The notes below the pieces were generated by a model, which searched no databases, had not been told where the DNA came from, and saw only the letters and a list, made by a program, of their open reading frames with translations. Below are positions 1 to 59,840 of a stretch of DNA of 64,000 nucleotides, piece by piece; within the stretch, counting starts at the first letter, position 1, and every line of letters starts with the position of its first letter. Origin of the DNA: Podarcis gaigeae (taxonomy: Eukaryota); NCBI GenBank assembly GCA_964106915.2, contig OZ066914.1; one strand, written 5' to 3'. Made by a program: the position numbers and the translations under genes.

Positions 1-470
1 GGTGGGGAGGGGTATTACTCAGAAGGGTGGTGGGAATGGGTGATTGGCAGATAGCTGTGATGAGCCTGTTGACGACTCTTAACGACTGCAATAGGTCTTA
101 CAGGAAGAAGCAAGGGGTGAAAAGGTGAAAAATGGCTTTGTCATGTATAATGAGATAAGAATCCAAGGTCTTAAAGCCATTTTTCACCTTGCTTCTTCCT
201 GTAAGACCTATTGCAGTCGTTAAGAGTCGTCAACAGGCTCATCACAGCTATCTGCCAATCACCCATTCCCACCACCCTTCTGAGTAATACCCCTCCCCAC
301 CTTCTCACTATATAGAAGGGTCTGGAAACTTCTGTTTCAGTGTATCTGAAGAAGTGTACATGCACACGAAAGCTCATACCAAGAACTGACTTAGTTGGTC
401 TTTAAGGTGCTACTGGAAGGAATTTTTTTTGTTTTGACTATGGCAGACCAACACGGCTACCTATCTGTAA
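1..470 (+). mobile_element. Penelope-like retroelement (PLE) end with inverted duplication (fold-back), in SLC25A29 intron 1; left arm runs off the window
   Basis: 1-139 is the near-perfect reverse complement of 173-301. This is followed by a hammerhead motif and the sauropsid PLE-type terminus GTTGGTCTTTAAGGTGCTAC...CAGACCAACACGGCTACC. Confidence 0.8.
342..379 (+). ncRNA. Minimal type-I hammerhead ribozyme motif (PLE-encoded)
   Basis: GTAT-CTGAAGA-A-GTGT(acatgc)ACAC-GAAA-GC-TC-ATAC. Stem I is GTAT/ATAC, core CUGANGA and GAAA are present, stem II is 4 bp, stem III is palindromic AGCU, and the predicted cleavage site is UC after nt 375. Confidence 0.8.
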
Positions 471-12039: not shown

Positions 12040-12798
12040 ACCCTTGGACTTTACAAAGGCATTGGGTCACCTATGATGGGACTTACCTTCATCAACGCCC
12101 TTGTGTTCGGCGTTCAAGGGAACACACTCCGTGCTCTCGGAAAGGACACTCCAATGAACCAGTTCCTTGCCGGTTCCGCGGCCGGCGCCATCCAGTGCGT
12201 CATCTGCTGCCCCATGGAGCTGGCTAAGACGCGGATGCAGCTGCAAGGGACGGGCGAATATAAGCTGAAGTCCAAGAACTACAAAAACTCCCTGGACTGT
12301 TTGGTCAAGATCTACCGGAAGGAAGGGCTGAAAGGCATCAACCGGGGGATGGTCTCCACGTTCATGAGGGAGACGCCCAGCTTTGGCTTCTACTTCCTGA
12401 CATACGACTGCCTCACCAGGTACTTGGGATGCGAGGCGGAGGACAGTTACATCATCCCCAAACTGCTCTTGGCGGGAGGCATGTCTGGGATTGTCTCCTG
12501 GCTCTCCACGTACCCCGTAGACGTGATCAAGTCTCGCCTCCAAGCAGATGGAGTGGGCGGGATTGTGCGCTACCACGGCATTCTGGACTGTGTCAGGAAA
12601 AGCTACCACGCCGAAGGCCTGAGGGTGTTCACAAGAGGCCTCACCTCCACGCTGCTTCGAGCTTTCCCCGTGAATGCTGCTACTTTCGCCACAGTCACTG
12701 TCTTCCTCATGTACATGAGGTCGGAAGAGAACCAGATCCGAGGCGATCTAAGTGGATGTGAGGCTGGCCCGGCGATCCAGCAGCCTTCAAGCTTTTAG
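12040..12798 (+). CDS. SLC25A29: SLC25A29 exon 4 (last coding exon; TLGLYKGIGSPMMG...QQPSSF*)
   Basis: Polypyrimidine tract and tag acceptor at 12039, in frame with ORF 12073-12798. Carrier motifs PMELAKTR and PVDVIKSR. Synteny with YY1. Confidence 0.95.
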   Translation, partial: TLGLYKGIGSPMMGLTFINALVFGVQGNTLRALGKDTPMNQFLAGSAAGAIQCVICCPMELAKTRMQLQGTGEYKLKSKNYKNSLDCLVKIYRKEGLKGINRGMVSTFMRETPSFGFYFLTYDCLTRYLGCEAEDSYIIPKLLLAGGMSGIVSWLSTYPVDVIKSRLQADGVGGIVRYHGILDCVRKSYHAEGLRVFTRGLTSTLLRAFPVNAATFATVTVFLMYMRSEENQIRGDLSGCEAGPAIQQPSSF

Positions 12799-12987
12799 AT
12801 TCCCAAACGGAAGCAAGTGATCTTCTTTTTATTTTATTTTTTCCTTTCTTTTTTTTTAAAAAAAATCTGGATGTACAAACTGTAAATTTCTGTCTGTATG
12901 AAGCATCCTTTTATTGTGACTTGGGATTTCACCTCCTTTATGAAAGCAGCAGATCTATTCTAGAAATCCAGGTAATAAGAGGACTTG

Positions 12988-12988
<1 letters not shown>

Positions 12989-13038
<50 letters not shown>

Positions 13039-13295
13039 TGCAGGTTTTGGTGTCCTCGGGTGTCTTCCCGTGTAAAAGTTGGGGTGTCTAGGCGACGTTT
13101 CGACGAGGTCTCACTCGTCATCTTCAGGCTGGTGCTGAAGATGGTGCACCAGCCTGAAGATGACGAGTGAGACCTCGTCGAAACGTCGCCTAGACACCCC
13201 AACTTTTACACGGGAAGACACCCGAGGACACCAAAACCTGCATTCCTGTACCCGTGAAAATCTACGAAAGCACATACACATATATATATATACAT

Positions 13296-13351
<56 letters not shown>
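12989..13351 (+). mobile_element. Penelope-like element fragment (98-bp perfect inverted repeat) inserted in (TA)n microsatellite, SLC25A29 3'UTR
   Basis: Arms 13038-13135 and 13146-13243 are exact reverse complements with a 10-nt spacer. An unpaired 3' tail follows to about 13270. (TA)n lies on both sides. Hammerhead core in each arm. Confidence 0.75.
13150..13190 (+). ncRNA. Hammerhead ribozyme core (mirror copy on - strand at about 13091-13131)
   Basis: CTGAAGA-T-GACGAG(tgagac)CTCGTC-GAAA-C-GTC. Perfect 6-bp stem II, palindromic ACGU stem III and a GUC triplet. Stem I is weak (2 bp). Confidence 0.65.
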
Positions 13352-13352
<1 letters not shown>

Positions 13353-13889
13353 AACATTGTCTTAAAAAAATAATAGACCTCATCCTACCTTCCAGCAGTT
13401 CATTATTTGGCACATGGCCTAGCTGCTGCTACAAACCTCATAAAAGACCCCCAGCCTACCCTATTCCCATTCAATATTGATATAAGCCCCTATGCAAGCA
13501 TTCTCCATGCATAAATGGTGGAGAAGGGGCAGGGAGCAGCACTGGGGTCCTGATTCTGTGCAGCACGTTATGCTTGCACAGTTGAATGTTGGTGGGTTCC
13601 CCTTGCAGACAATGGCGCCGTGCATGTTGGGATGGCAAGGCAACTGGCGCACATTCTAGCAGGATGGGTTTTCTTTGCCTTACGTGTTTGTGCTTGAATA
13701 GAGATGTGAGCCTTATTCAGGCATTTGCCTGAAAGTATGTGGGATAAAACGGAGGGAGGGGGCAAGGGCAAGCACACAAAACTCCCTCTCTGAATGTCTC
13801 AGTGCACTGGCTCCATTTCTGACCTTCCCATTTTGAGAGGGAAGATGTAGAGAGGAATTGCTAAGTGAATTAGGAAACCTCGTCAAGAT

Positions 13890-14125
13890 CAGGACATGTT
13901 GCCATATTTCAAAAGCTGAAAGTCCAGCTTTTTTTTAGTTTTGCCCAAAGTTGTGGACTTTTTGGAGCTATTTTTAAGGAAAATCTGCAAAAAATAAAAA
14001 AAATGACACTGCCGGCATGGGTTGCCATACGTCCAGATTTTCCTGGACATTTTAGCTGATTCCCACCCGGACACTGCTTCTGATTCCAGCTATGTCCGGG
14101 AAATTCCGGACCTATGGCAACCCTA
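13890..14125. mobile_element. hAT-like MITE (GGGTTGCCA termini)
   Basis: GGGTTGCCATACGTCC...TATGGCAACCCTA. Related copy at 41834-41972. Confidence 0.55.
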
Positions 14126-14306
14126 ATGTTCACCCAAGCAGTTTTAATCCCCTGCCCTCACAGCACGAAAAGAGAGAGGAATCCAGATGTGCTGGAAAAC
14201 CTGGCTTCAGGTGGCGCTAAAGCCATTGCCTAATCACCCCTTTGTTAGGCAGAATCCCACCAGCAATACTCAGTGACTGAGAATCAGGGAACCTGTGTCC
14301 CTACAC

Positions 14307-33200: not shown

Positions 33201-35389
33201 ATCTGCACTAGAAAGTAAGCCCCATTTATATCAGTAGTACTTGCTTCTAAGAAAGCATGGATATGTCACTGCAGAAATTATCCATTTAACATATCAGATT
33301 CCGTAAACCACTTATGAAACTCAATTACTTGAAAAATTATCAGCATGGTCAATAAAGTGATATTGCTATGAAAATATCATTTTAGATTGTCACAGAATGC
33401 CACTGGCTCAGTTTCTCTGAAGTACCAGAGGACAAGATAACCAATAGTGAAAGGGACTGGAAATTTTAAAAACACTGAATAAAATCTGTTCTGGGAAAGT
33501 TTTTAGACAGCACACAGGATTGAGCTATGATGTTCCACATAATCTAATGTGAGTTGCTTCCTAAGAATTGCAAGCCTTAGTTCTAAATTAAGTGATTGTG
33601 TTTAGTAGTTCAAAGTCTGTTTTGGGAGCCTAATCCGGCCCCTGTGGCAGTTTTTTTCCTGGGATAAAATCCTTAAAAACCCTCAACAACTTCAATCCTA
33701 AGAAAACTCAACAAACATAGCCCTTCATAAAATCTGGCCCTCTTTGAAAGAAGTTTTGACACCACTGATTTACAGAGAGCACACCAAACACATCTGTCAC
33801 TGGTCTCTAAGCAATGTAATGATATATTTACTCAATGAAAAAATATCATGTACAAAATTAGTACAGCACAAATGTTATGTAAACTGTATAGTCATAGATT
33901 CTGGATTGTGCTCCTGGCTGGCAGTGTTTATTTTATTAATGATTAAAACAATTACTCTGTCCTGGGGATTATGTTGTCCTGCTATTATTAATAATATACA
34001 AAGTTGCCCTTTTAACACCAGGACTTTCTAAAACTATGTATTATCAATGCAGCAATAAGGTAGAAACTCAAGCTAATTCAGCAAATATTTATGTTTCTTT
34101 CACTTAACACACTGAAATGTGCATGAACTGTGTTCTAATCAGCCAAGCAGGCATATATTGTGAAACACTAGGAGCCAAATTCATACCCATTTTTATGTTT
34201 CTATGCTATACTTCAAGGGATTACTTGCGTATAACCTGGCATAGCTCACTCATTAGAGCATGAGACTCTTGTGTGAAACATTCCTGCAATGCAGGAGGTT
34301 GGTCTAGATGACCCTCACAGTCCCTTCCAACTCTGCAATTCTATGGATTAGGACACTTAAAAATAAAGGATTAATGGTAGTAGGTTCTCCATTCATTAAC
34401 ACTATTTAACTTGAAAAAAGCATTTGAGAACTCTAAAACCCTGAAGTTTCCTCCAGCTGCTACCCTTTACTATTAACCCATATATACAGGCAGGAACCGC
34501 AAGCACTGCTTACTGCGGAGCTTAATTCCCTTAAAACAACATATCCTGGATCTGGAGGCAGGCAGTTTCAATTTCACACACCTGCTGTGTAATGAGAAGA
34601 GGTGGCATCACCTCTTAAGTCAAAAGTCACTCTCTCTGCTGGTCTTCTGCCAGAGATCCAGCTTCCAGGGTCAGAGAGGATCCACCTCCTTCCTTCAGAG
34701 CAGATGTCAGTGATCCAGGCGCCTAATTTTAGGCCTCCCTCAGACCCCTCAAGTTATTAAAAACCCCGCTAGATGTCAGCTAAAGAGACTTTTAAGCACC
34801 GTGAAAACAGGCTCAGTTTGGGAAACGTGTTTCGTGTAAAAGTGGCTCGGTTCTGGTGTTGGAAGGAGGCGGCAACTAGGGCGCTTCCCCGACTTACTGG
34901 CAGTAAAACTGCAAGCCGCGCTTCCTGAACAGACCTCTTGTCGGAATTTATTCGGGAGTTTTTATGGGGAGGAGAGGGGGACTTAGCCAAAATCCCGGGA
35001 GGAAGGAGATAAATGAGGAGGAACCAGTCAGACAAGCGCTACGAAGTCGAGGCGGCTGGTTGGGGAAAGGAAACGGACATGAGGCGGGGCGCGAGAAGGG
35101 AAGGAAACGGCTTATCCGTTTTCTTGTGGGGGAAGGAAAGAAGGTGGAAAAGCCCAGCGAGGAGGCTGAGGGGGAAAGGGAACGTTTAAAGGTCGCCCCG
35201 AGTCTGTCACGGGGTAGAGAATGAAAGGAAGGAGGCTACACGGGGGGGGGGGGGACGGAAACGAGGCAGCTCGAGGAGAGGGAGGCAGGCTGGAAGAGGG
35301 GAGGGAAGGGGCCGGCGAGCTCGGCCCGCGCCGCCGCGTGCCTGCACCGCCTCCCTCCTCCTCCCTCCCTCCCCCTACTGCAGAAACTA

Positions 35390-36548
<1,159 letters not shown>

Positions 36549-38261
36549 GGCGGCGGGCGCAGCGGCGGCGGCCCCGAGCCTAGCGACGGGCCTCGGCTCC
36601 GCTCGTCCGCCCGACGCCGGCGGGGCTCAGGCTCCTCTCGCTCGCCTTCCTTCTCCCTCTCCTCCTCCTCCGCGGCCGCCTCCTCCCCCTTCCACACAAA
36701 CACCAGCTCCTCGCTGGGAGGGAGGGAGGAGGGTGGGAAGCAAGCAGGCAGCAGCCTCCGCCGCCGCCGCCAAATCCCGCCCGCGCCGCCTCGCGAGACT
36801 TCCGCCGCTGCGAGAGACAGGCGCCCCGAGCCTCCCTCGCCCGCCATCCAGGCCCGGGGGAGGCCGCGGCTGCCGACGGGACACGCCCCCCGTTCGCGGC
36901 CGGGGGGCCAATCGCCGGGCGAAGCTCGACCTCAGGGCTCCGCCCACCACCCAAACCACGCCTCACTCACCAACGGCCAAACAGGCCGGTTGGTCTTCCG
37001 CCGCCCCTCGCTTCCCCCCTTCTCGGCGCACAGCCTATCGCGAAGGAGCTCGGCCGCGGGGCCACGCCCACCCACCCGCTCCTCCTCCTCCATCATCTCC
37101 CTCTTGGGTTCCAGTCAGCTTGCCGTTGGCTTCTGACGAAGCTTCTCTCGGGTGGGTCGGCCGTTGCTTTCTGCGGCCCCTCCCACTTCTCTGGAGAGAG
37201 CTGCTCGAGACTGTCATTGGCTGGTTCCGGTTTGCTGGGCCGGTTGGCGCGGCGGCGGCAACTTCGGCGCCTCTGGCTTTTCTGAGGGGTCGGGGTCGGT
37301 TCCCTCAGAGCGTCCGTGGCGGGTGGGAACGTGTCGCCATCCCGGGGGCAGTTTTGAAAAGAGGAACGGGAGGGTGGGGAGACTGCCTCCTGCCCTCTCC
37401 ATCTGGCGGAAGATTTCCCCCACCTTGGAGGCAAGGGGAGCAAAATGCCGCCTCGCCGTGGCTTCCCTCTCGCCGCTTCGCTTTGCTAATCCGAATCGCG
37501 TTTTCACCGAATCCTGCCGCCGCCTCCCTTAAGGGCCCTCCGAAAAGGACCAGAAGATGCGGAGCTCTTCCTCACCCGGAGACGCGGAGGCTTCGTCGCC
37601 TCTCCAAACCGCCAGCAGCTGAAACGACACCGCTCCTCTCTCCGGGAGACTCCAGATTTGGCTGGCCGCGATCGCTCCGTTTTGGGAAGCGAACTGGTTG
37701 CCGTGCTTGCAATTGGATGCTCGACGCATCGTCTGAAGAGACGTCGCTGCCTTTATTTTCCCTTTGGAAACTGAGCTGCCGCTGCCCCGCCGGCATTTCT
37801 GGAGAGGTGCCTCTTGTCTAACATGATTTTACAGCTCAGGGCAACGTGCCTCGCGATCCTATGCAAACGGCGGACGCCTGGGACAAGGTGAAGGACGAAT
37901 GCATATAATATTCGGAGGCTGGTTTCGGTGGTGCTTGTAAAAGTGCTCCAGTAAATTGTGCTTAAAGAGTGTAACCTCTTCTTCCCATTGCTTTTCTTTT
38001 CTGCGTCTTGGCTTTTTGGGATTCAGCAACTGAGGAAATGGACTGCGTAGTTTTCATTGATTTGTAAACTGCTCTAGGAAGCTTTTCTGGTTGAAGGGTA
38101 AGTTGTAAATGCTTTGAATAAATAAACTTTGCACTCAATACTGGGTGCAGAAATGGTTGCTTTCCCTCCTCCACTTGTGTTTATTTGGATTACAATATTA
38201 ATGGTTATGTTAGCATGAATTCAATTAATGTGTGCTGTTGTGTAAAATGTAATAAGGGGGC

Positions 38262-49355: not shown

Positions 49356-51470
49356 TCTTCTTTTTTAATTCATTTTCTATAACCAAACAACAACAGAGAG
49401 AGAAAAAGAAAAATAGCCAACACATACAAAAAAAGAAAAAGAAAACATCAACCAAAACAAAACACCTAAACCAACCAAAAAACAAACATTAATTAACAAT
49501 AAATAACGATTGACTTCCCTCCATCTCGGTTTTGGGTTATGTGAATATTAAATCCATTCTGCAGTTTTTCATTTTTTAACGTAAACACATCGCATGGGTT
49601 ATATTAAACCTACTGTGATTTTTATATCTCTAGAATTTGTTTCCATATATGTTATGAATTTAGACCAATCGTCAATAAACTTTGTACCTTTTTGCTGTCT
49701 AATGTTCTGCGTCATTTTTGCCAAATCCATATACTCAAATAATTTAATTTGCCAATCTTTAACGGTCGGGGTATTTGGGGTTTTCCAATTTTGTGCTAAC
49801 AGAATCCTGGCAGCTACAGTTGCATATTGAAACATTATATAATCTTCTTTCTTAATCTCCTCTCTGATCATTCCCAGAAGGAAGGCTTCGGGCTTTTTGA
49901 CAAAGGTGTATTTAAGTATTTTCTTTAGTTCGTTGTAGATGGAATCCCATTTTTTTTTAACTTCTTCACATTTCCACCAAATGTGGTAGAAGCTTCCCTC
50001 TTTAGATTTACACTTCCAACACCTTTTGTCGCCAGTCTTATACATTTTTTGCAATTTCACAGGGGTGATGTACCAACGATACATCATCTTTTCCATATTT
50101 TCTCTGAGGGCAGTACAGGCTGTAAATTTCATTCCTTTAGTCCACAACTTCGTCCATTTTTCAAAATCCAAATTATAGCCAATGTCTATTGCCCATTTTA
50201 CCATAACCTCTTTAACCTCTTCGTCCTTGGTGTTCCACTCTAATAGCTGATTATACATTTTAGATAGCAGTTTAGTTTTACTTTCTATTATCTCTACCTG
50301 GAACTTAGATTTTTTCTCATTCATTCCAATCTTTTTATCTTCCTTCCATAAGGCATTAATTTGATGATACTGCAGCCAACCTGTTAATTTGCTTTTTAAC
50401 TCTTCGTAAGATCTAATTTTCCATCCTCTTTCCGATTTTTCCAGGAGATCTTCATAGGTCAATCTCTCACCTTCCATGTTTTTTTTTTTAGTAGTTAATA
50501 TGTCAATAGGGGATAGCCACCAGGGGGTATTTTTTTCCAGTAGTTTTTTATTTTTTCCCCACGCTTCTAACAGTGTTCCTCTGATGATGTGGTTTGAGAA
50601 GCCTTTATGCACCTTTTCCTTATTCTGCCAGAGATAAGCATGCCAACCAAATCTTAGATCGAAGCCTTCTAAGTCTAGCAGATCTGTATTTTTTAAAGTG
50701 ACCCATTCTCTAAGCCAACAAAGGCACGAGGCTTCATAATACAATCTCAGATTTGGGACTGAGAATCCTCCTCTGTCTTTTCTGTCCGTTAACAGTTTAA
50801 ATCTAATTCTCGGTCTTTTACCTTGCCATATAAATTTAGAGAGAATTTTTTGCCAATTTTTAAATATTGCACTTCCTCTAATCACTGGGACATTTTGGAA
50901 TAAAAATAAAAGTTTTGGTAGTATACACATCTTGATTGCAGCCATTCTGCCTGACCAGGAGAGTTTTATCCTATTCCAGGTATCTAGTTCTTTTTGGATT
51001 TCCTTCCAGGTGTTTGTATAGTTATCAGCCATTAAGTTTATATTTCTCATTGTTAGCCACACTCCTAGATATTTTATCTTTTTTGCTTCTTTGATTCCCG
51101 ATTGGAGTTCTAGCTGCCTCCTTAGATCTTCTCCCATATTCTCAACCATCATTTTAGTTTTAGTTTTATTTAACTTGAAGCCCGCTACTTTCCCAAATTC
51201 CTCTAGAAGTACCACAACTTTGTCAATACTCTGTATCGGGTCCTCGACTGATATTACCAGGTCATCAGCGTATGCTTTCAGTTTGAATTCTTTCACCCCA
51301 ATTCTAATTCCTCGTATCTCAGATGTTTTCCTTATCTTATTTGCAATTACTTCCAACACCATTATGAAAAGAAGCGGAGACAGGGGGCAGCCTTGTCTTG
51401 TACCCTTTGAAATTTCGAATGTGTCAGATAAATTGTTATTAATAATCAGTTTGACTCTTTGATTTGAGTA
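49356..51470 (-). mobile_element. 5'-truncated young L1-clade LINE with uninterrupted ORF2 (RT C-half and C-terminal zinc knuckle)
   Basis: Open frame from 51470 to 49599 with GTRQGCPLSP, YADD and CWKC..H..WKC. Perfect 17-bp TSD AATTTATATAAGGTTTC at 49339-49355 and 51471-51487. Confidence 0.95.
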
Positions 51471-54785: not shown

Positions 54786-57700
54786 CTCCATATGGAGAGA
54801 CGACCAATGGGTGACGCAAGCAAAAATCAAGTTAGCGGAATTTTTTGAGATAAATGGGAAACAAAATACAGATATAAATGTAGTTTGGGACACAAGTAAA
54901 GCGTACATGAGGGGTCTTGGAATACAACAAATGGCAAGGCTGAAGAAGATTAAAGACAATAATATCCAAGAGCTAACTAAATGGATAAGAATTAATGAAA
55001 AAGAGTTGATCAAAAATCCAAAAAGTCATGAAATATTACAAAAAATAAAGATATTGCAATCCCATATCTCTATTATATTAAATAAGGAAGTAGAAAATAA
55101 AATTAAATGGGCAAAACAAAGGTATTTTGAGTCCGCCAATAAGCCCGGTAAGTTGTTAGCATGGATGATAAAGGAAAAGCAAACAAGAAAAGTTATAAAT
55201 AAATCTTTGGACCAAGGGGAGGAAATAACAGACCCAGTAAAAAAAAAAAAAAAAAATCCTAAACTTTTATAAAGATTTGTATAAACAAGAACATTTAGAG
55301 GTTAATAAAATGGAAGAGTATTTACAACAAAATAAATTACCAAGAATTGAAAAAGAAGAAGGTGAGGCCCTAAACTCCAATATAGAAATAGATGAAATAG
55401 CACAAGTAATAAAAAAAATGAAGAGTGGCAAATCGCCAGGTCTTGACGGAATCACATTAATGTACTATAAGAACCTGGAAGAAGTAATGCTCCCTACATT
55501 ACAAAGAATAATGAATAATATACTGGGAGGGAAAGATATACCACAACAATGGAAAGAAGCACTGATCACTCTAATTCCGAAAAAGGGAGTGGAGTTGACA
55601 GACATGAAAAATTATAGACCAATCTCCCTGTTGAACACAGACTATAAAATCTATGCTGGGGTGATGGCTAATAGATTAAAAAAGACCTTAAACAAAATAA
55701 TCAGCAGAGACCAGGCGGGCTTCTTACCGGATAGACATATAAAAGACAATACAAGAATAATAATTGATCTGTTGGAATATGTGGAAATGAAACCAAGTAA
55801 AAAGATCGCCATGTTATTGGTTGATGCAGAAAAAGCTTTTGATAGAGTATCATGGAATTTCCTATTGGCAACTTTCAAAGGTCTGGACATAGGGGAGAAA
55901 ATAATTAATGGAATTAGGGCGATATATGATAACCAAAAAAAGCAAAATTGCTAATAAATAACGAGATCACCGAAGAGTTCAGCATCGAAAGGGGGACAAG
56001 ACAGGGGTGCCCTCTCACCCCACTTCTTTTTATTGCCACCTTGGAACCACTTTTAATAGCAATAAGAAAGGATAAAAATATAAGAGGAATTAACCTAGGA
56101 ACTCGATACTACAAAATTAAAGCCTTTGCCGATGATGTAATTGTAACCACTGAAAATCCAGTGGAAAGTATCCAAAAAACACTTGCATAATTGGAAGAAT
56201 TTGGAAAGGTCTCGGGGTTCAAACTGAATAAAAGAAAATCCAAATTATTAACGAAAAATTTACGTAAGCTGGAAAAAGAGGAACTGGAAAATACAACAGG
56301 TTTAAAGGTAGCCAATAAGGTAAATTATTTGGGGGTTTGGATCACCAATAAGACTATAAACCTATATAAGGACAATTATGAGAAGAAGTGGAAGGAAATA
56401 AACAAAGAATTAGAGACTTGGGGAAAATTTAATTTGTCCCTGTGGGGGAGAATATCCACAGTTAAAATGATGGTATTGCCAAAGATGATTTTTATGTTCC
56501 AAACAATACCTATAATTAGAGGCATAAAGTGTTTTAAGGATTGGCAGAAAGACCTTGCCAAATTTATTTGGCAAGGGGAAAAACCACGCATAAAATTGAA
56601 GCTACTAACAGAGTTGAAGGAAAAAGGAGGCTTTGCGGTCCCTGACCTTAAACTGTACTTTGAGGCAGCGTGCTGGACTGGATATTAATTAAAAACACGG
56701 AAGTCCTTGATCTGGAGGGATGGGATATTGTGTACGGGTGGCATGGCTATGACAAGGTTAAATCCCACAAAGGATTTTTAAATCATATTGTGAGGGCATT
56801 ATATGAAGTATGGGAGAGGAGTAAAAAATCAGTAGTAACCAAAACACCATGGTGGCTGTCACCAATGGAATCTATGTCGGTTCACAGGATGAATATGAAC
56901 AGCGATTGGCTAACATATAAGGATTTAGTAGAGGAAACAAGTAGTGATCCGAAAATAAAGGACCTAAGTGAATTGAAACAGAAGGGAATAACCTGGCTGG
57001 AGTATTATCAATTAAAAGCTGCCCTTGAAAAGGATAAAAGAACCAAAGGATTTGACAAAAAAATATCCTATCTGGAGAATGATATTTTATATAATAATCA
57101 AAAGACACTTTCTAAAATGTACAAACTACTTTAGAATTGGCAAAGAAAGGAGGAAGATATAAAAGAAATTACAGTAAAATGGGAGAGGGACCTGGGACAC
57201 ACGATCAAACCCAATATTTGGAACGAATTATGGACTAAAAATATAAAATTCACGGCTTGTTTCCTTATAAGGGAAAATCTTATGAAAATGTACTATAGGT
57301 GGTACCTGACCCCTGTAAAACTTGCAAAAATAAATAAATCAAACAATAACAAGTGCTGGCGATGTAAGGAACAGATAGGAACATACTACCATATGTGGTG
57401 GTCCTGTCTAGAGATACAAAGATTTTGGAATATGATTTATGAAGAGAGAAAGAGATTGATAAAAACTACATTTAGCAAGAAACCGGAAGAATTTTTACTA
57501 CGAATGGTTTCAGATAATATTCCCAAAAACAAAACTAGGCTATTTATGTATGCAACGTCAGCAGCAAGGGTTATAGTGGCAAAACACTGGAAAGATAAAA
57601 ATATACCCACTAAAGAGGAATGGGTAGTCAAATTGTGCGAGTACTTGGAGCTCGCAAAGCTGACAGATGCAATAAGAGATAAACCTAAAAAGTTGGTGAA

Positions 57701-58127: not shown

Positions 58128-58609
58128 GAAAACATTGTTTAGCCACCATTCACCAGAAGCTTGGGGGGAAAGAGGCCTGTTCTGAACCACACCAGGCAGG
58201 GCAGCCCCCACCATTTCTTCCCTATGGGTGGGAGGAGACCAGCAGCTCCTATTCACTGTGAGGATGCTGTACTGGCAGAATGGAGGGTGGTGGGGTGTTT
58301 GCCGGGGAGACAAGAAGTCCAGCCTCCAAAGAATACGCCACAGCCATTGCTGCCACTGTGGTGGCAGCAGCGGGCAATGTATTCCTTGGAGGCCAGATCT
58401 GCCTCCTCTGTGGATCCTACTGCCTGAGGCAGTCGCCTCACCTTGCCTAATGGGTGGGCCAGACCTTCGTGGAGGCCTGGTTTATGTTGGGTAAGTAGCC
58501 TGATGGATATTAGGGGCAGAGGGATTTGTCTAGTTGGCACCACAATTCCACGATTGGATGCCAGGCAGTTTGGGCTACATTTGTCCTAATGTTTTTTTTC
58601 CCTCCTCAG

Positions 58610-59352
58610 CGAAGTACCCAGCCATCAAGTCTCTCATGGGGCCAGATCCCTACTTGAAATGGATAGTGACGGGGATGGTGTTCACCCAGCTTCTGGCCTG
58701 CTACCTTGTGAGAGACCTTTCTTGGAAGTGGATCTTCTTCTGGGCCTATGCTTTTGGGGGCTGCATCAACCACTCCATGACCCTGGCCATCCACGACATC
58801 TCCCACAACGTGGCCTTTGGCAACAAGCAAATCAAGTGGAACCGGTGGTTTGCCGTCTTTGCCAACTTGCCCATTGGACTCCCCTACTCGGCCTCCTTCA
58901 AGAAGTACCACATAGACCACCACCGATACCTTGGTGGAGACTTGTTGGATGTGGACATCCCCACAGACTTTGAGGGCTGGTTCTTCTGCACTCCCTTTCG
59001 GAAGATGATCTGGCTTGTCTTCCAGCCCCTTTTCTATGCCTTGAGACCACTCTACATCAACCCCAAAACAATTACCGAGATGGAAATACTTAACGCTTTG
59101 GCCCAGTTCTCTGTCGACTTGATCATCTACTACCTGTGGGGTTTGAAGCCTGTTGTTTATTTAATATCAGGGACGTTGCTTTGCATGGGCTTGCACCCTT
59201 TTTCGGGGCACTTCATAGCAGAACACTATATGTTCCTGAAAGGTTATGAAACGTATTCCTACTACGGACCCCTCAACTGGATCACCTTTAACGTGGGCTA
59301 TCATATGGAGCACCATGATTTCCCCAGCGTTCCTGGATCTAAGCTGCCAATG
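58610..59352 (+). CDS. DEGS2: DEGS2 exon 2 (743 nt; three His boxes HDISH, HIDHH, HMEHH)
   Basis: Pyrimidine tract and cag acceptor, ATG|gtaag donor. Membrane desaturase His boxes. Confidence 0.95.
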
Positions 59353-59840
59353 GTAAGCTCTAGAGTTTTTGACCCTTGCAAACAGGTTTGCCTCTCTGGG
59401 TGTTGCTGAAATACAACACCCTTCGGCCCCAAGCAAGCATGGCAGTGGCAAGGGATGATGGGAGTTGTGGTTCAGCAACATCTGGACAAGCCAAAGGTTG
59501 TGAAGCTAGTTTACATATGCAGCTTATGAAAGAAAAGTGGGTCCTGAATCCTGAAATTAGAGGTGGAGCAGTTAGGTAATTTTAGACTCCGGACTTAACG
59601 ACCTGGTAGGAAGGCATCTATTTAGACAGTAGCATGCATTAACTTCAAAATGCGATAAGCCAGCGTTGTTCTGTTTGGGAGCCTCCCGGCTCATACCTGC
59701 ACCTTAATGTCATCGCTGCTTGGGGGGATGCAGTGGGAATAATGGTATTTAAATATACAGCATAAAGTAAGTGAATGCAGATTGCTAGCCAGACACTATT
59801 TTGTAGCTGGCTTAACCCCAAGCACCAATGATACTCTAGA

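What the first reader, a model, noticed from the sequence alone, without database searches (positions are those of the whole stretch)
12989..13351. Perfect 98-bp fold-back with two mirror-image hammerhead cores just after the SLC25A29 stop codon
Seen: 13038-13135 and 13146-13243 are exact reverse complements with a 10-nt loop, embedded in (TA)n about 240 nt past the stop. No AATAAA lies between the stop and the element. Each arm contains CUGAAGA-U-[GACGAG/CUCGUC]-GAAAC-GUC, so both strands encode a hammerhead core. Known: Penelope-like elements carry minimal hammerheads with palindromic stem III that can work as dimers, and they often insert with inverted ends. Inference: the mRNA 3'UTR contains a self-cleaving motif together with its own antisense lock. 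The 98-bp duplex would sequester the ribozyme and create an ADAR, Dicer or Staufen substrate, giving a possible conformational switch on mRNA stability. Zero arm divergence with intact CpGs implies a recent, possibly polymorphic insertion. Caveat: stem I is only 2 bp, so activity is uncertain.
Basis: partly seen in the sequence, partly recalled or inferred. Interest (0 to 1): 0.8.

Follow-up and report, generated by a model that had tools for sequence, protein, structure and literature searches.

The report
Head-to-head truncated Penelope retroelement insertion
The perfect 98-bp fold-back is real, but it is an ordinary recent insertion of two back-to-back stubs of a very abundant lizard Penelope-type jumping gene, and its small hammerhead motif is almost certainly inert here.

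Summary
Arms 13038-13135 and 13146-13243 are exact reverse complements with a 10-nt loop. They sit in (TA)n, 239 nt past the stop codon of a mitochondrial-carrier gene, and each arm carries the same hammerhead core.

The element is not a UTR device. It is two head-to-head, extremely 5'-truncated copies of one module of a Poseidon-type Penelope-like element (PLE): the pLTR end, the hammerhead and the start of the ORF.

- The layout matches the published Anolis element Poseidon_Ac. The ORF's ATG sits at the start of helix II. The GAAACGUC cut site lies 25 nt after the ATG. A one-sided "tail" ends in an AC-rich site about 112 nt into the ORF. The target is AT-rich.
- Contigs from two samples of the species put the arm thousands-fold above single-copy depth. 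Other family copies read straight on where this copy turns back, and they end at the same 3' end followed by (AT)n.
- One transcript holds only one sense motif. That motif has a 2-bp helix I and no helix III of its own, and it is locked in a -217 kcal/mol hairpin.

Self-cleavage or a conformational switch is therefore unsupported. Inclusion in the 3'UTR is likely but not shown. The scan has already noted many similar Penelope hammerhead fold-backs elsewhere in this genome. Interest is low.

The parts
12040..12798 (+).
   Evidence: Translation is open to the stop. Pfam Mito_carr E=4.6e-50. The paralogue name rests on my recollection of the human protein and on a DEGS-like desaturase exon downstream.
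12989..13037 (.). Left (TA)n microsatellite ending in ACACATAT; AT-rich target or flank of the left copy
   Evidence: PLE endonucleases prefer AT-rich DNA and (TA)n (PMC11167929, PMC8557442).
13038..13135 (-). Left arm: PLE copy in minus orientation, running from 8 nt upstream of the CUGAAGA box to ORF position 84 (..CCTGCAT)
   Evidence: 100% reverse complement of the right arm. Family contigs read on past 13136 with another sequence (loose ends).
13094..13127 (-). Minimal hammerhead motif of the left copy (antisense in a + strand transcript)
13136..13145 (.). 10-nt asymmetric junction (loop). With C13135 it forms CTGAAGATG, a 9-nt duplicate of 13154-13162. Base 13136 still follows the family sequence.
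13146..13243 (+). Right arm: PLE copy in plus orientation (8 nt of pLTR end, hammerhead, first 84 nt of the ORF)
   Evidence: Summed contig depth is 1e5-1e6 against about 80 (X1) or 11 (X3) in unique flanks. In 24 (X1) and 6 (X3) contigs the family copy is followed by (AT)n right after 13243.
13154..13187 (+). Minimal hammerhead motif: CUGAAGA, bulged U, 6-bp helix II (GACGAG/CUCGUC, 6-nt loop), GAA, palindromic ACGU, C17. The predicted cleavage site is after 13187.
   Evidence: The features are as listed in PMC4209133.
13160..13162 (+). ATG of the PLE ORF, formed by A9, the bulged U and G10.1. The frame stays open for 42 codons into the microsatellite.
   Evidence: The arrangement is the same in Poseidon_Ac.
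13244..13272 (+). One-sided 'tail': continuation of the ORF to an AC-rich site at about ORF positions 112-121. It is present only on the right copy.
   Evidence: Poseidon_Ac starts reverse transcription 111-118 nt into the ORF in an AC-rich loop. A 30-40 bp tail at one end is typical of PLEs. Peptide ENLRKHI (residues 33-39) compares with ESLRQHI (34-40) of Poseidon_Ac.
13273..13351 (.). Right (CATA)/(TA)n microsatellite flank

Best explanation
A recent insertion of a Poseidon-type Penelope-like retroelement into a (TA)n microsatellite downstream of the carrier gene's stop codon. It is most likely a single event. Only the 3'-terminal module of the element was copied: the last 8 nt of the pseudo-LTR, the minimal hammerhead that straddles the ORF's start codon, and the first 84 nt (left copy) or about 112 nt (right copy) of the ORF. 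It was laid down twice, head to head. PLE proteins nick AT-rich DNA and extend both target strands. They start reverse transcription inside the beginning of the next tandem ORF copy, which produces inverted 5'-truncated copies and a one-sided tail. Both arms stop at the same base, and the loop is asymmetric and repeats 9 nt of the arm (CTGAAGATG). This suggests that one arm was copied from the other by a fold-back or template switch of the nascent cDNA (inferred, not shown). In a + strand transcript the two arms would pair into a perfect 98-bp duplex. The single sense hammerhead cannot form there, and the element has no ribozyme role at this locus. Any effect on the host mRNA would be the generic effect of a long dsRNA hairpin in a UTR.
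For: The palindrome is exact. The arm is a very abundant repeat: summed contig depth is 177,000-964,000 against about 80 in X1, and 96,000-436,000 against about 11 in X3, a second sample of the same organism. In 23 X1 contigs the family sequence continues past 13136 with one agreed sequence (TTCGGCTTCTTG...) where this copy turns back. In 24 (X1) and 6 (X3) contigs the family ends at 13243 followed by (AT)n. A further contig shows another inverted pair of the same family with different truncation points and (TA)n between them (table 5c). [quoted passage not shown] The architecture matches Poseidon_Ac: ATG at the start of helix II, GAAACGUC, a cut site 25 versus 26 nt after the ATG, an AC-rich 3' end at about 112 versus 111-118 nt, and ENLRKHI versus ESLRQHI at the same distance from the ATG. 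The literature describes inverted 5'-truncated copies, a one-sided 30-40 bp tail and a (TA)n bias, and cleavage and extension of both strands of AT-rich DNA by the Anolis PLE protein. Youth is indicated by CpG observed/expected of 0.97 against 0.37 and by 1086 of 3009 X1 contigs being at least 99% alike. The hairpin MFE is -216.8 kcal/mol, z = -30.8. Single minimal hammerheads show no detectable cleavage in vitro.
Against: No reverse transcriptase or GIY-YIG sequence is present in this copy. I could not fetch a full-length element of this family to show that the arm is its pLTR/ORF junction. Sequence similarity to Poseidon_Ac is limited to layout, the GAAACGUC box and a 7-residue peptide match, judged by eye. 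No contig shown spans the centre of the palindrome or a junction to unique DNA, so the exact structure at this locus rests on the assembly alone. The fold-back copying step is inference. Rfam hammerhead models give no match, although they also miss the clearer motif at 346-375.
Confidence: 0.85

Rival explanations
1. The fold-back is a working regulatory device of the mRNA. A hammerhead is held inactive by its antisense arm and can switch to a cleaving form, or the duplex has been recruited as an ADAR, Staufen or Dicer target that tunes mRNA stability.
For: It probably lies in the 3'UTR. No AATAAA or ATTAAA occurs before it, and the probable RNA run X19 covers both sides at depth 33-48. The core motif is intact. 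A 98-bp perfect duplex would be a substrate for dsRNA-binding proteins (general knowledge).
Against: It is one of thousands of copies of a young repeat, so nothing indicates selection at this locus. There is only one sense motif per transcript, and this hammerhead type needs two to build helix III. Helix I is 2 bp and the family sequence upstream is truncated. The competing hairpin has -216.8 kcal/mol. Single minimal PLE hammerheads are inactive in vitro, and dimers are only weakly active. In Anolis RNA-seq, no reads start or end at the Poseidon hammerhead site.
Confidence: 0.03
2. The perfect palindrome is an assembly artefact: a fold-back chimera or mis-join inside (TA)n. The real locus would hold a single copy or none.
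For: PLE inverted structures and microsatellites are known to trouble assemblies. No contig shown bridges the loop or links an arm to unique flank.
Against: The palindrome is short. It is flanked on each side by different unique sequence that is present in independent runs (X1, X3, X19). It has an asymmetric loop and a one-sided tail that fit PLE biology in detail. Read-level fold-back artefacts normally mirror everything up to the read end and give no tail on one side only.
Confidence: 0.05
3. It is a fold-back DNA transposon (MITE) with 98-bp terminal inverted repeats and a TA target duplication, moved as a palindromic unit.
For: Perfect inverted repeats, a short loop and TA-rich flanks. Other notes of the scan describe hairpins of about 209-285 nt with back-to-back hammerheads elsewhere in this genome (not checked).
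Against: Family contigs read through the loop position into further non-palindromic sequence, with full agreement among 23 contigs. Depth rises towards the 3' end, as in 5'-truncated retroelements. The end lies at a known PLE reverse-transcription start and carries a one-sided tail. Another inverted pair of the family has different truncation points (table 5c).
Confidence: 0.03
4. Two independent insertions of the same family into one (TA)n tract, in opposite orientations.
For: The family targets (TA)n, and copies are very numerous.
Against: Both copies are truncated at exactly the same base and are 100% identical over 98 nt. They abut with only 10 nt between them, without intervening (TA)n. 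That differs from the other inverted pair seen.
Confidence: 0.03

Closest known systems
Poseidon_Ac, the Penelope-like element of Anolis carolinensis (Arkhipova 2006; PMC11167929)
   Same: The hammerhead spans the pLTR/ORF junction with the ATG at the start of helix II. Both have the GAAACGUC box, a cut site 25-26 nt after the ATG and a 3' end (tail) in an AC-rich site about 111-118 nt into the ORF. Both insert into AT-rich DNA, and the Anolis protein extends both target strands. The short peptide ENLRKHI/ESLRQHI lies at the same position.
   Different: Helix II and most of the nucleotide sequence differ (GACGAG/CUCGUC here). Helix I is 2 bp against 3 bp. Only the first 28-38 codons are present here, with no RT or endonuclease, so the clade assignment is by layout only.
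Minimal hammerheads of metazoan PLEs (Cervera and de la Pena 2014, PMC4209133)
   Same: [quoted passage not shown] That paper already reports pairs of such motifs close together on opposite strands and thousands of mostly truncated copies per genome.
   Different: Helix I is 2 bp instead of the usual 4-5, as in the D. virilis variant. Here the two motifs are only 26 nt apart in a perfect palindrome.
Complex tandem/inverted PLE insertions (Evgen'ev and Arkhipova 2005; Craig et al. 2021, PMC8557442)
   Same: An inverted 5'-truncated copy abuts the element, a 30-40 bp tail sits at one end only, and there is a microsatellite (TA)n bias.
   Different: This is an extreme case. Both copies are cut down to about 100 nt, so the whole insertion is little more than the inverted repeat.
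Animal non-LTR retrozymes (PMC7229834; bioRxiv 10.64898/2026.07.22.740005)
   Same: Non-coding, PLE-derived sequences that carry type I hammerheads.
   Different: Retrozymes are direct tandem repeats, so that two sense ribozymes can dimerise and release a unit RNA. Here the copies are inverted, so no unit can be excised.
Inverted-repeat Alu pairs in human 3'UTRs, and the discontinuous hammerhead of rodent Clec2 3'UTRs (recalled from memory; Martick et al. 2008 is cited in PMC4209133)
   Same: Transposon-derived long duplexes, or a hammerhead, located in a 3'UTR that can affect mRNA fate.
   Different: No evidence of any effect here. The Clec2 ribozyme forms all three helices in cis, and this motif cannot.

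Membership tests
Minimal PLE hammerhead (min-HHR) | Catalytic boxes CUGANGA and GAAA in type I order | tested here: met
   CUGAAGA ... GAAA at 13154-13183 (+) and mirrored on the - strand
Minimal PLE hammerhead (min-HHR) | [quoted passage not shown] | tested here: met
   U at 13161. GACGAG/CUCGUC gives 6 bp closed by G-C, with a 6-nt loop. This hairpin is also present in the MFE fold of a single arm.
Minimal PLE hammerhead (min-HHR) | No own helix III: palindromic 15.1-16.1 tetranucleotide followed by H17 | tested here: met
   GAA-ACGU-C at 13181-13187. The same GAAACGUC is found in Poseidon_Ac.
Minimal PLE hammerhead (min-HHR) | Helix I of about 4-5 bp | tested here: not met
   Only 2 bp (GC/GC) adjoin the core. 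The copy is cut 8 nt upstream of the box, so any distal helix I partner of the family is missing. A 2-bp helix I is known in the D. virilis variant.
Minimal PLE hammerhead (min-HHR) | Belongs to a large genomic family of such motifs | tested here: met
   Thousands-fold excess depth in two samples, with 3009 contigs laid in X1
Minimal PLE hammerhead (min-HHR) | Self-cleavage (as a dimer) | not testable with these tools
   Needs in vitro transcription. Published min-HHRs: none as a single motif, weak as a dimer.
Rfam hammerhead families (Hammerhead_1, _3, II, HH9, HH10) | Score against the covariance model | tested here: inconclusive
   No hammerhead match at E<=10 on 701 nt or on the 80-nt arm, and none at gathering in the window. 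The clearer PLE motif at 346-375 is missed as well, so these models do not cover the helix III-less type.
Penelope-like element, Poseidon-type insertion | Hammerhead at the pLTR/ORF junction with the ORF's ATG at the start of helix II | tested here: met
   ATG at 13160-13162, open for 42 codons. Same arrangement in Poseidon_Ac.
Penelope-like element, Poseidon-type insertion | 3' end at an internal reverse-transcription start in an AC-rich site about 111-118 nt into the ORF, giving a tail at one end | tested here: met
   The right copy runs to CACATACACA at ORF positions about 112-121. The left copy and most family copies end at position 84.
Penelope-like element, Poseidon-type insertion | AT-rich or (TA)n target and an adjacent inverted 5'-truncated copy | tested here: met
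Penelope-like element, Poseidon-type insertion | RT plus GIY-YIG endonuclease ORF | tested here: inconclusive
   Only 28-38 N-terminal codons are present, as expected for an extreme 5' truncation. ENLRKHI against ESLRQHI is the only protein-level similarity. No full-length family member could be fetched.
Animal non-LTR retrozyme | Direct tandem repeats, each with a sense hammerhead | tested here: not met
   The two copies are inverted, and there is no direct repeat of the unit
MITE / fold-back DNA transposon | Family copies share both inverted termini and move as a unit | tested here: not met
   Family contigs continue past the loop position into non-palindromic sequence (loose ends at 13136)

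The most novel reading that the evidence does not exclude
The insertion is carried in the mature SLC25A29-like mRNA, and its 98-bp perfect duplex changes the fate of that mRNA. This could happen by editing, retention or decay, or by rare cleavage when the sense motif pairs in trans with abundant family transcripts. The result would be a young, possibly polymorphic expression allele created by a ribozyme-bearing retroelement.
Probability: 0.03. Interest if true: 0.65.

Novelty: new member of a known kind. Interest (0 to 1): 0.12.

Why it matters
It matters little for ribozyme or UTR biology, because this is a routine copy of a known class of repeat. It has two modest uses. First, the exact symmetry, the asymmetric loop that repeats 9 nt of the arm, and the one-sided tail record the still unvalidated late steps of Penelope integration (second-strand synthesis or template switching). 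A census of such palindromic copies could test those steps. Second, a 98-bp perfect hairpin inside a probable 3'UTR is a natural test case for what long dsRNA does to a lizard mRNA, if the insertion turns out to be polymorphic.

Tried and rejected
- Rfam found no hammerhead family on the 701-nt region, on the single arm or on the whole window. It returned only generic miRNA-hairpin matches caused by the palindrome. I reject this blank as evidence against a hammerhead, because the control motif at 346-375 is also missed.
- BLAST of the arm plus tail against the window found no other copy, and the family's upstream sequence is absent from the window.
- Two exact-pattern scans of metagenome contigs, one for the core and one for the 3' end, were blank.
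- The search of the scan's notes by sequence was blank.
- I considered using the start of X19 coverage at 12495 as an exon boundary to prove that the run is RNA.
- I considered a fortuitous extension of helix I (GGUG/CACC). It uses loop bases that are not part of the family sequence, so it is not a family feature.
- I did not align typed Poseidon_Ac letters with the window, because typed long sequences were to be avoided. The comparison is by eye.

Full report
**Observation**

- Arms 13038-13135 and 13146-13243 are 98 nt long and 100% complementary, with 10 nt between them.
- (TA)n-type microsatellite lies on both sides, at 12989-13037 and 13273-13351.
- The 34-nt core CTGAAGATGACGAGTGAGACCTCGTCGAAACGTC occurs once on each strand, at 13154-13187 (+) and 13127-13094 (-). 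It occurs in none of 100 shuffles.
- The upstream ORF is a mitochondrial carrier (Pfam Mito_carr, E=4.6e-50) and ends with TAG at 12796-12798. The fold-back therefore starts 239 nt after the stop.
- The name SLC25A29 rests on my memory of the human protein. It is also consistent with a DEGS-like desaturase exon further along the window, which fits the human neighbourhood as I recall it.
- No AATAAA or ATTAAA lies on the + strand between the stop and 13993.

**Is the hammerhead motif more than chance?**

I wrote a descriptor with the features that Cervera and de la Pena (PMC4209133) list for the minimal hammerheads of Penelope-like elements (PLEs). These features are:
- CUGANGA, with zero or one extra nucleotide before helix II;
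- helix II of at least 4 bp, closed by G10.1-C11.1;
- GAAA, a complementary 15.2/16.2 pair, U16.1 and H17.

The descriptor found nothing in 300 simulated 64-kb windows. In the real window it found the two mirror motifs here, a third motif at 346-375, and one overlapping match that starts at the duplicated box in the loop.

The motif has the bulged U, a 6-bp helix II, and the palindrome ACGU followed by C17. It has no helix III of its own, so it is the type that can only build helix III by pairing with a second copy. Helix I next to the core is only 2 bp.

Rfam gave no hammerhead match at E<=10, either on 701 nt or on the isolated arm. It gave nothing at gathering score in the whole window. The clearer PLE-type motif at 346-375 is missed in the same way, so the blank says only that Rfam's models do not cover this helix III-less type. 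The strong miRNA-family matches are an effect of the perfect hairpin.

**What the arm is**

I laid contigs of four public runs on 12300-14300.

*Abundance.* The arm is a very abundant repeat.

| Run | Sample | Summed depth over the arms | Depth in unique flank |
|---|---|---|---|
| X1 | organism A | 177,000-964,000 | about 80 |
| X3 | organism A, second sample, another study | 96,000-436,000 | about 11 |

In X1, 3009 contigs were laid, and 1086 of them were at least 99% alike. Summed depth is not a copy number, but the excess is thousands-fold. It is highest over the outer part of the arm, which is the 3' end of the element, as expected for a 5'-truncated retroelement.

*Ends of the family.* Two sets of loose ends define the family.
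- Behind 13136, 23 X1 contigs continue with one agreed sequence (TTCGGCTTCTTGTTACTGGAACAGAG). Other copies therefore read on where this copy turns back.
- Behind 13243, 24 contigs in X1 and 6 in X3 continue with (AT)n. CCTGCAT is therefore a regular 3' end of the family, next to AT microsatellite.
- One further contig shows a different inverted pair of the same family, with other truncation points and (TA)n between the copies (table 5c).

No other copy lies in this window. That is compatible with thousands of copies in a genome of gigabase size.

**Identification as a Penelope-like element**

The published Anolis element Poseidon_Ac (PMC11167929 and its File S1) has a hammerhead that spans the junction between pseudo-LTR and ORF.
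- Its cut site is 26 nt after the start codon.
- Its box reads GAAACGUC.
- Its protein cuts AT-rich DNA and, unlike R2 or L1, extends both target strands.
- It starts reverse transcription inside the next tandem ORF copy, 111-118 nt from the ATG, in an AC-rich stem-loop. This produces the 'tail' typical of PLE insertions.

The element here has the same anatomy.
- A9, the bulged U and G10.1 form an ATG at 13160-13162 that opens a 42-codon frame.
- The box is GAAACGUC, and the cut site is 25 nt after the ATG.
- The right copy continues beyond the palindrome for 29 nt (13244-13272). It ends in CACATACACA at ORF positions about 112-121, where it merges into the microsatellite.
- The peptide ENLRKHI (residues 33-39) faces ESLRQHI (34-40) of Poseidon_Ac. 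I compared these by eye.

Craig et al. (PMC8557442) describe, for PLEs in general, an inverted 5'-truncated copy abutting the element, a 30-40 bp tail at only one end, and a bias for (TA)n. All three features are seen here.

I therefore read the feature as two head-to-head copies of the module 'pLTR end, hammerhead, ORF start'. Each copy is truncated 8 nt upstream of the CUGAAGA box.

Two things were not shown. There is no RT or GIY-YIG sequence in this copy, and I could not fetch a full-length member of the family. Two metagenome scans were blank.

**How it arose (inference)**

Both arms end at the same base and are identical, which argues for one event and against two independent insertions. 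The loop is asymmetric. Its first base still follows the family sequence. Together with C13135 it spells CTGAAGATG, a 9-nt repeat of 13154-13162.

A nascent cDNA that folded back or switched template, with one short slip, and then copied its own or its partner's strand would give exactly this result. The longer right copy with the tail may be the primary one. The published in vitro system leaves these late steps unvalidated.

**Age**

- The arms are identical.
- CpG observed/expected is 0.97 in the arm, against 0.37 in the window.
- The arm equals family contigs in other runs without a single difference: X19 record 14 and X4 record 25.

A recent insertion is well supported. Whether it is polymorphic could not be tested, because no contig shown bridges the microsatellites or the loop. 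For the same reason, the reads neither confirm nor refute the exact palindrome at this locus.

I rate an assembly artefact as unlikely (about 0.05). The two sides are flanked by different unique sequence that is present in independent runs, and the asymmetric loop and one-sided tail match PLE biology.

**Is it in the 3'UTR?**

Probably, but this is not shown. No strong poly(A) signal precedes it. Run X19, from a related organism, covers 12495-12817, 12901-12980 and 13408-14300 at similar depth (48, 37 and 33).

X19 is labelled only as a guess at RNA. I think it is RNA for two reasons. It holds only 65 million letters of contigs. The MITE at 14019-14123 stands 100- to 600-fold above baseline in the three DNA runs, but only about 2-fold above baseline in X19.

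If X19 is RNA, the homologous UTR runs at least 1.5 kb past the stop. No run of organism A on record as RNA was available.

**What it does**

In a + strand transcript the two arms pair into a 98-bp perfect duplex. The MFE is -216.8 kcal/mol, against -72 +/- 5 for shuffles.

The transcript contains one sense motif and one antisense motif, not two ribozymes. This hammerhead type needs a second sense copy to form helix III. Its helix I is 2 bp, and the family's upstream sequence is lost.

Published minimal PLE hammerheads show no detectable cleavage as single motifs and only weak cleavage as dimers. Anolis RNA-seq shows no ends at the Poseidon site.

I conclude that the motif is inert here. The 'antisense lock' is a by-product of the insertion mechanism. 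The only plausible host effect is the generic one of a long hairpin in a UTR. That effect is known for inverted Alu pairs in human UTRs, as I recall from memory.

**Comparison and verdict**

The kind is known: PLE minimal hammerheads, pairs on opposite strands, inverted truncated copies, the tail and the AT-rich target. This is one more copy, from a family related in layout to Poseidon_Ac.

The scan itself has already noted many such cases on other pieces of this genome. 73 notes mention both hammerhead and Penelope. Two follow-ups called them ordinary lizard PLE pieces. I did not verify that the organism is a lizard.

The regulatory-switch reading is unsupported. Interest is low.

Noticed in passing
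window 1-470: A second, unrelated PLE-type piece. It has a fold-back with 125-nt arms (1-125 / 177-301, 97% complementary), followed by a sense minimal hammerhead at 346-375 (CUGAAGA-A-GUGU..ACAC-GAAAGCUC) with a 4-bp helix I. There is no ATG at helix II, so it belongs to a different family from the one at 13154. Rfam misses it too.
   Followed up: partly
window 13037-13304, runs X3 versus X4: The hammerhead family is thousands-fold above single-copy depth in both samples of organism A. In organism B, the closest other species by shared words, it is represented by a single contig at depth 4.9, identical over 98 nt. The neighbouring MITE is equally abundant in A and B. This could be a very recent burst in organism A's lineage or a horizontal arrival. 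The lone contig in B could be carry-over within the same study.
   Followed up: no
window 14019-14123: A 105-bp MITE with 32-nt terminal inverted repeats (88% complementary, GGGTTGCCATACGTCC...). Contig loose ends in three DNA runs stop exactly at 14016/14019 and 14125/14126, and depth there is 100- to 600-fold above the flanks. The only AATAAA near the gene's 3' end (13993) lies in an A-rich stretch just upstream of it.
   Followed up: partly
window 49599-51362 (-) and 55277-55954 (+): ORFs with reverse-transcriptase domains (Pfam RVT_1, E=4e-9 and 2e-18) and no GIY-YIG match. They are probably LINE fragments, not the PLE family discussed here.
   Followed up: no
window 58534-59409 (+): An ORF with fatty-acid desaturase and sphingolipid delta4-desaturase domains (DEGS-like exon). 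It is consistent with the gene order I recall around human SLC25A29.
   Followed up: no
window 34001-38000: A GC-rich island (GC 0.55-0.61) with long overlapping ORFs on both strands and no Pfam match. It may be a CpG-island first exon of a neighbouring gene.
   Followed up: no
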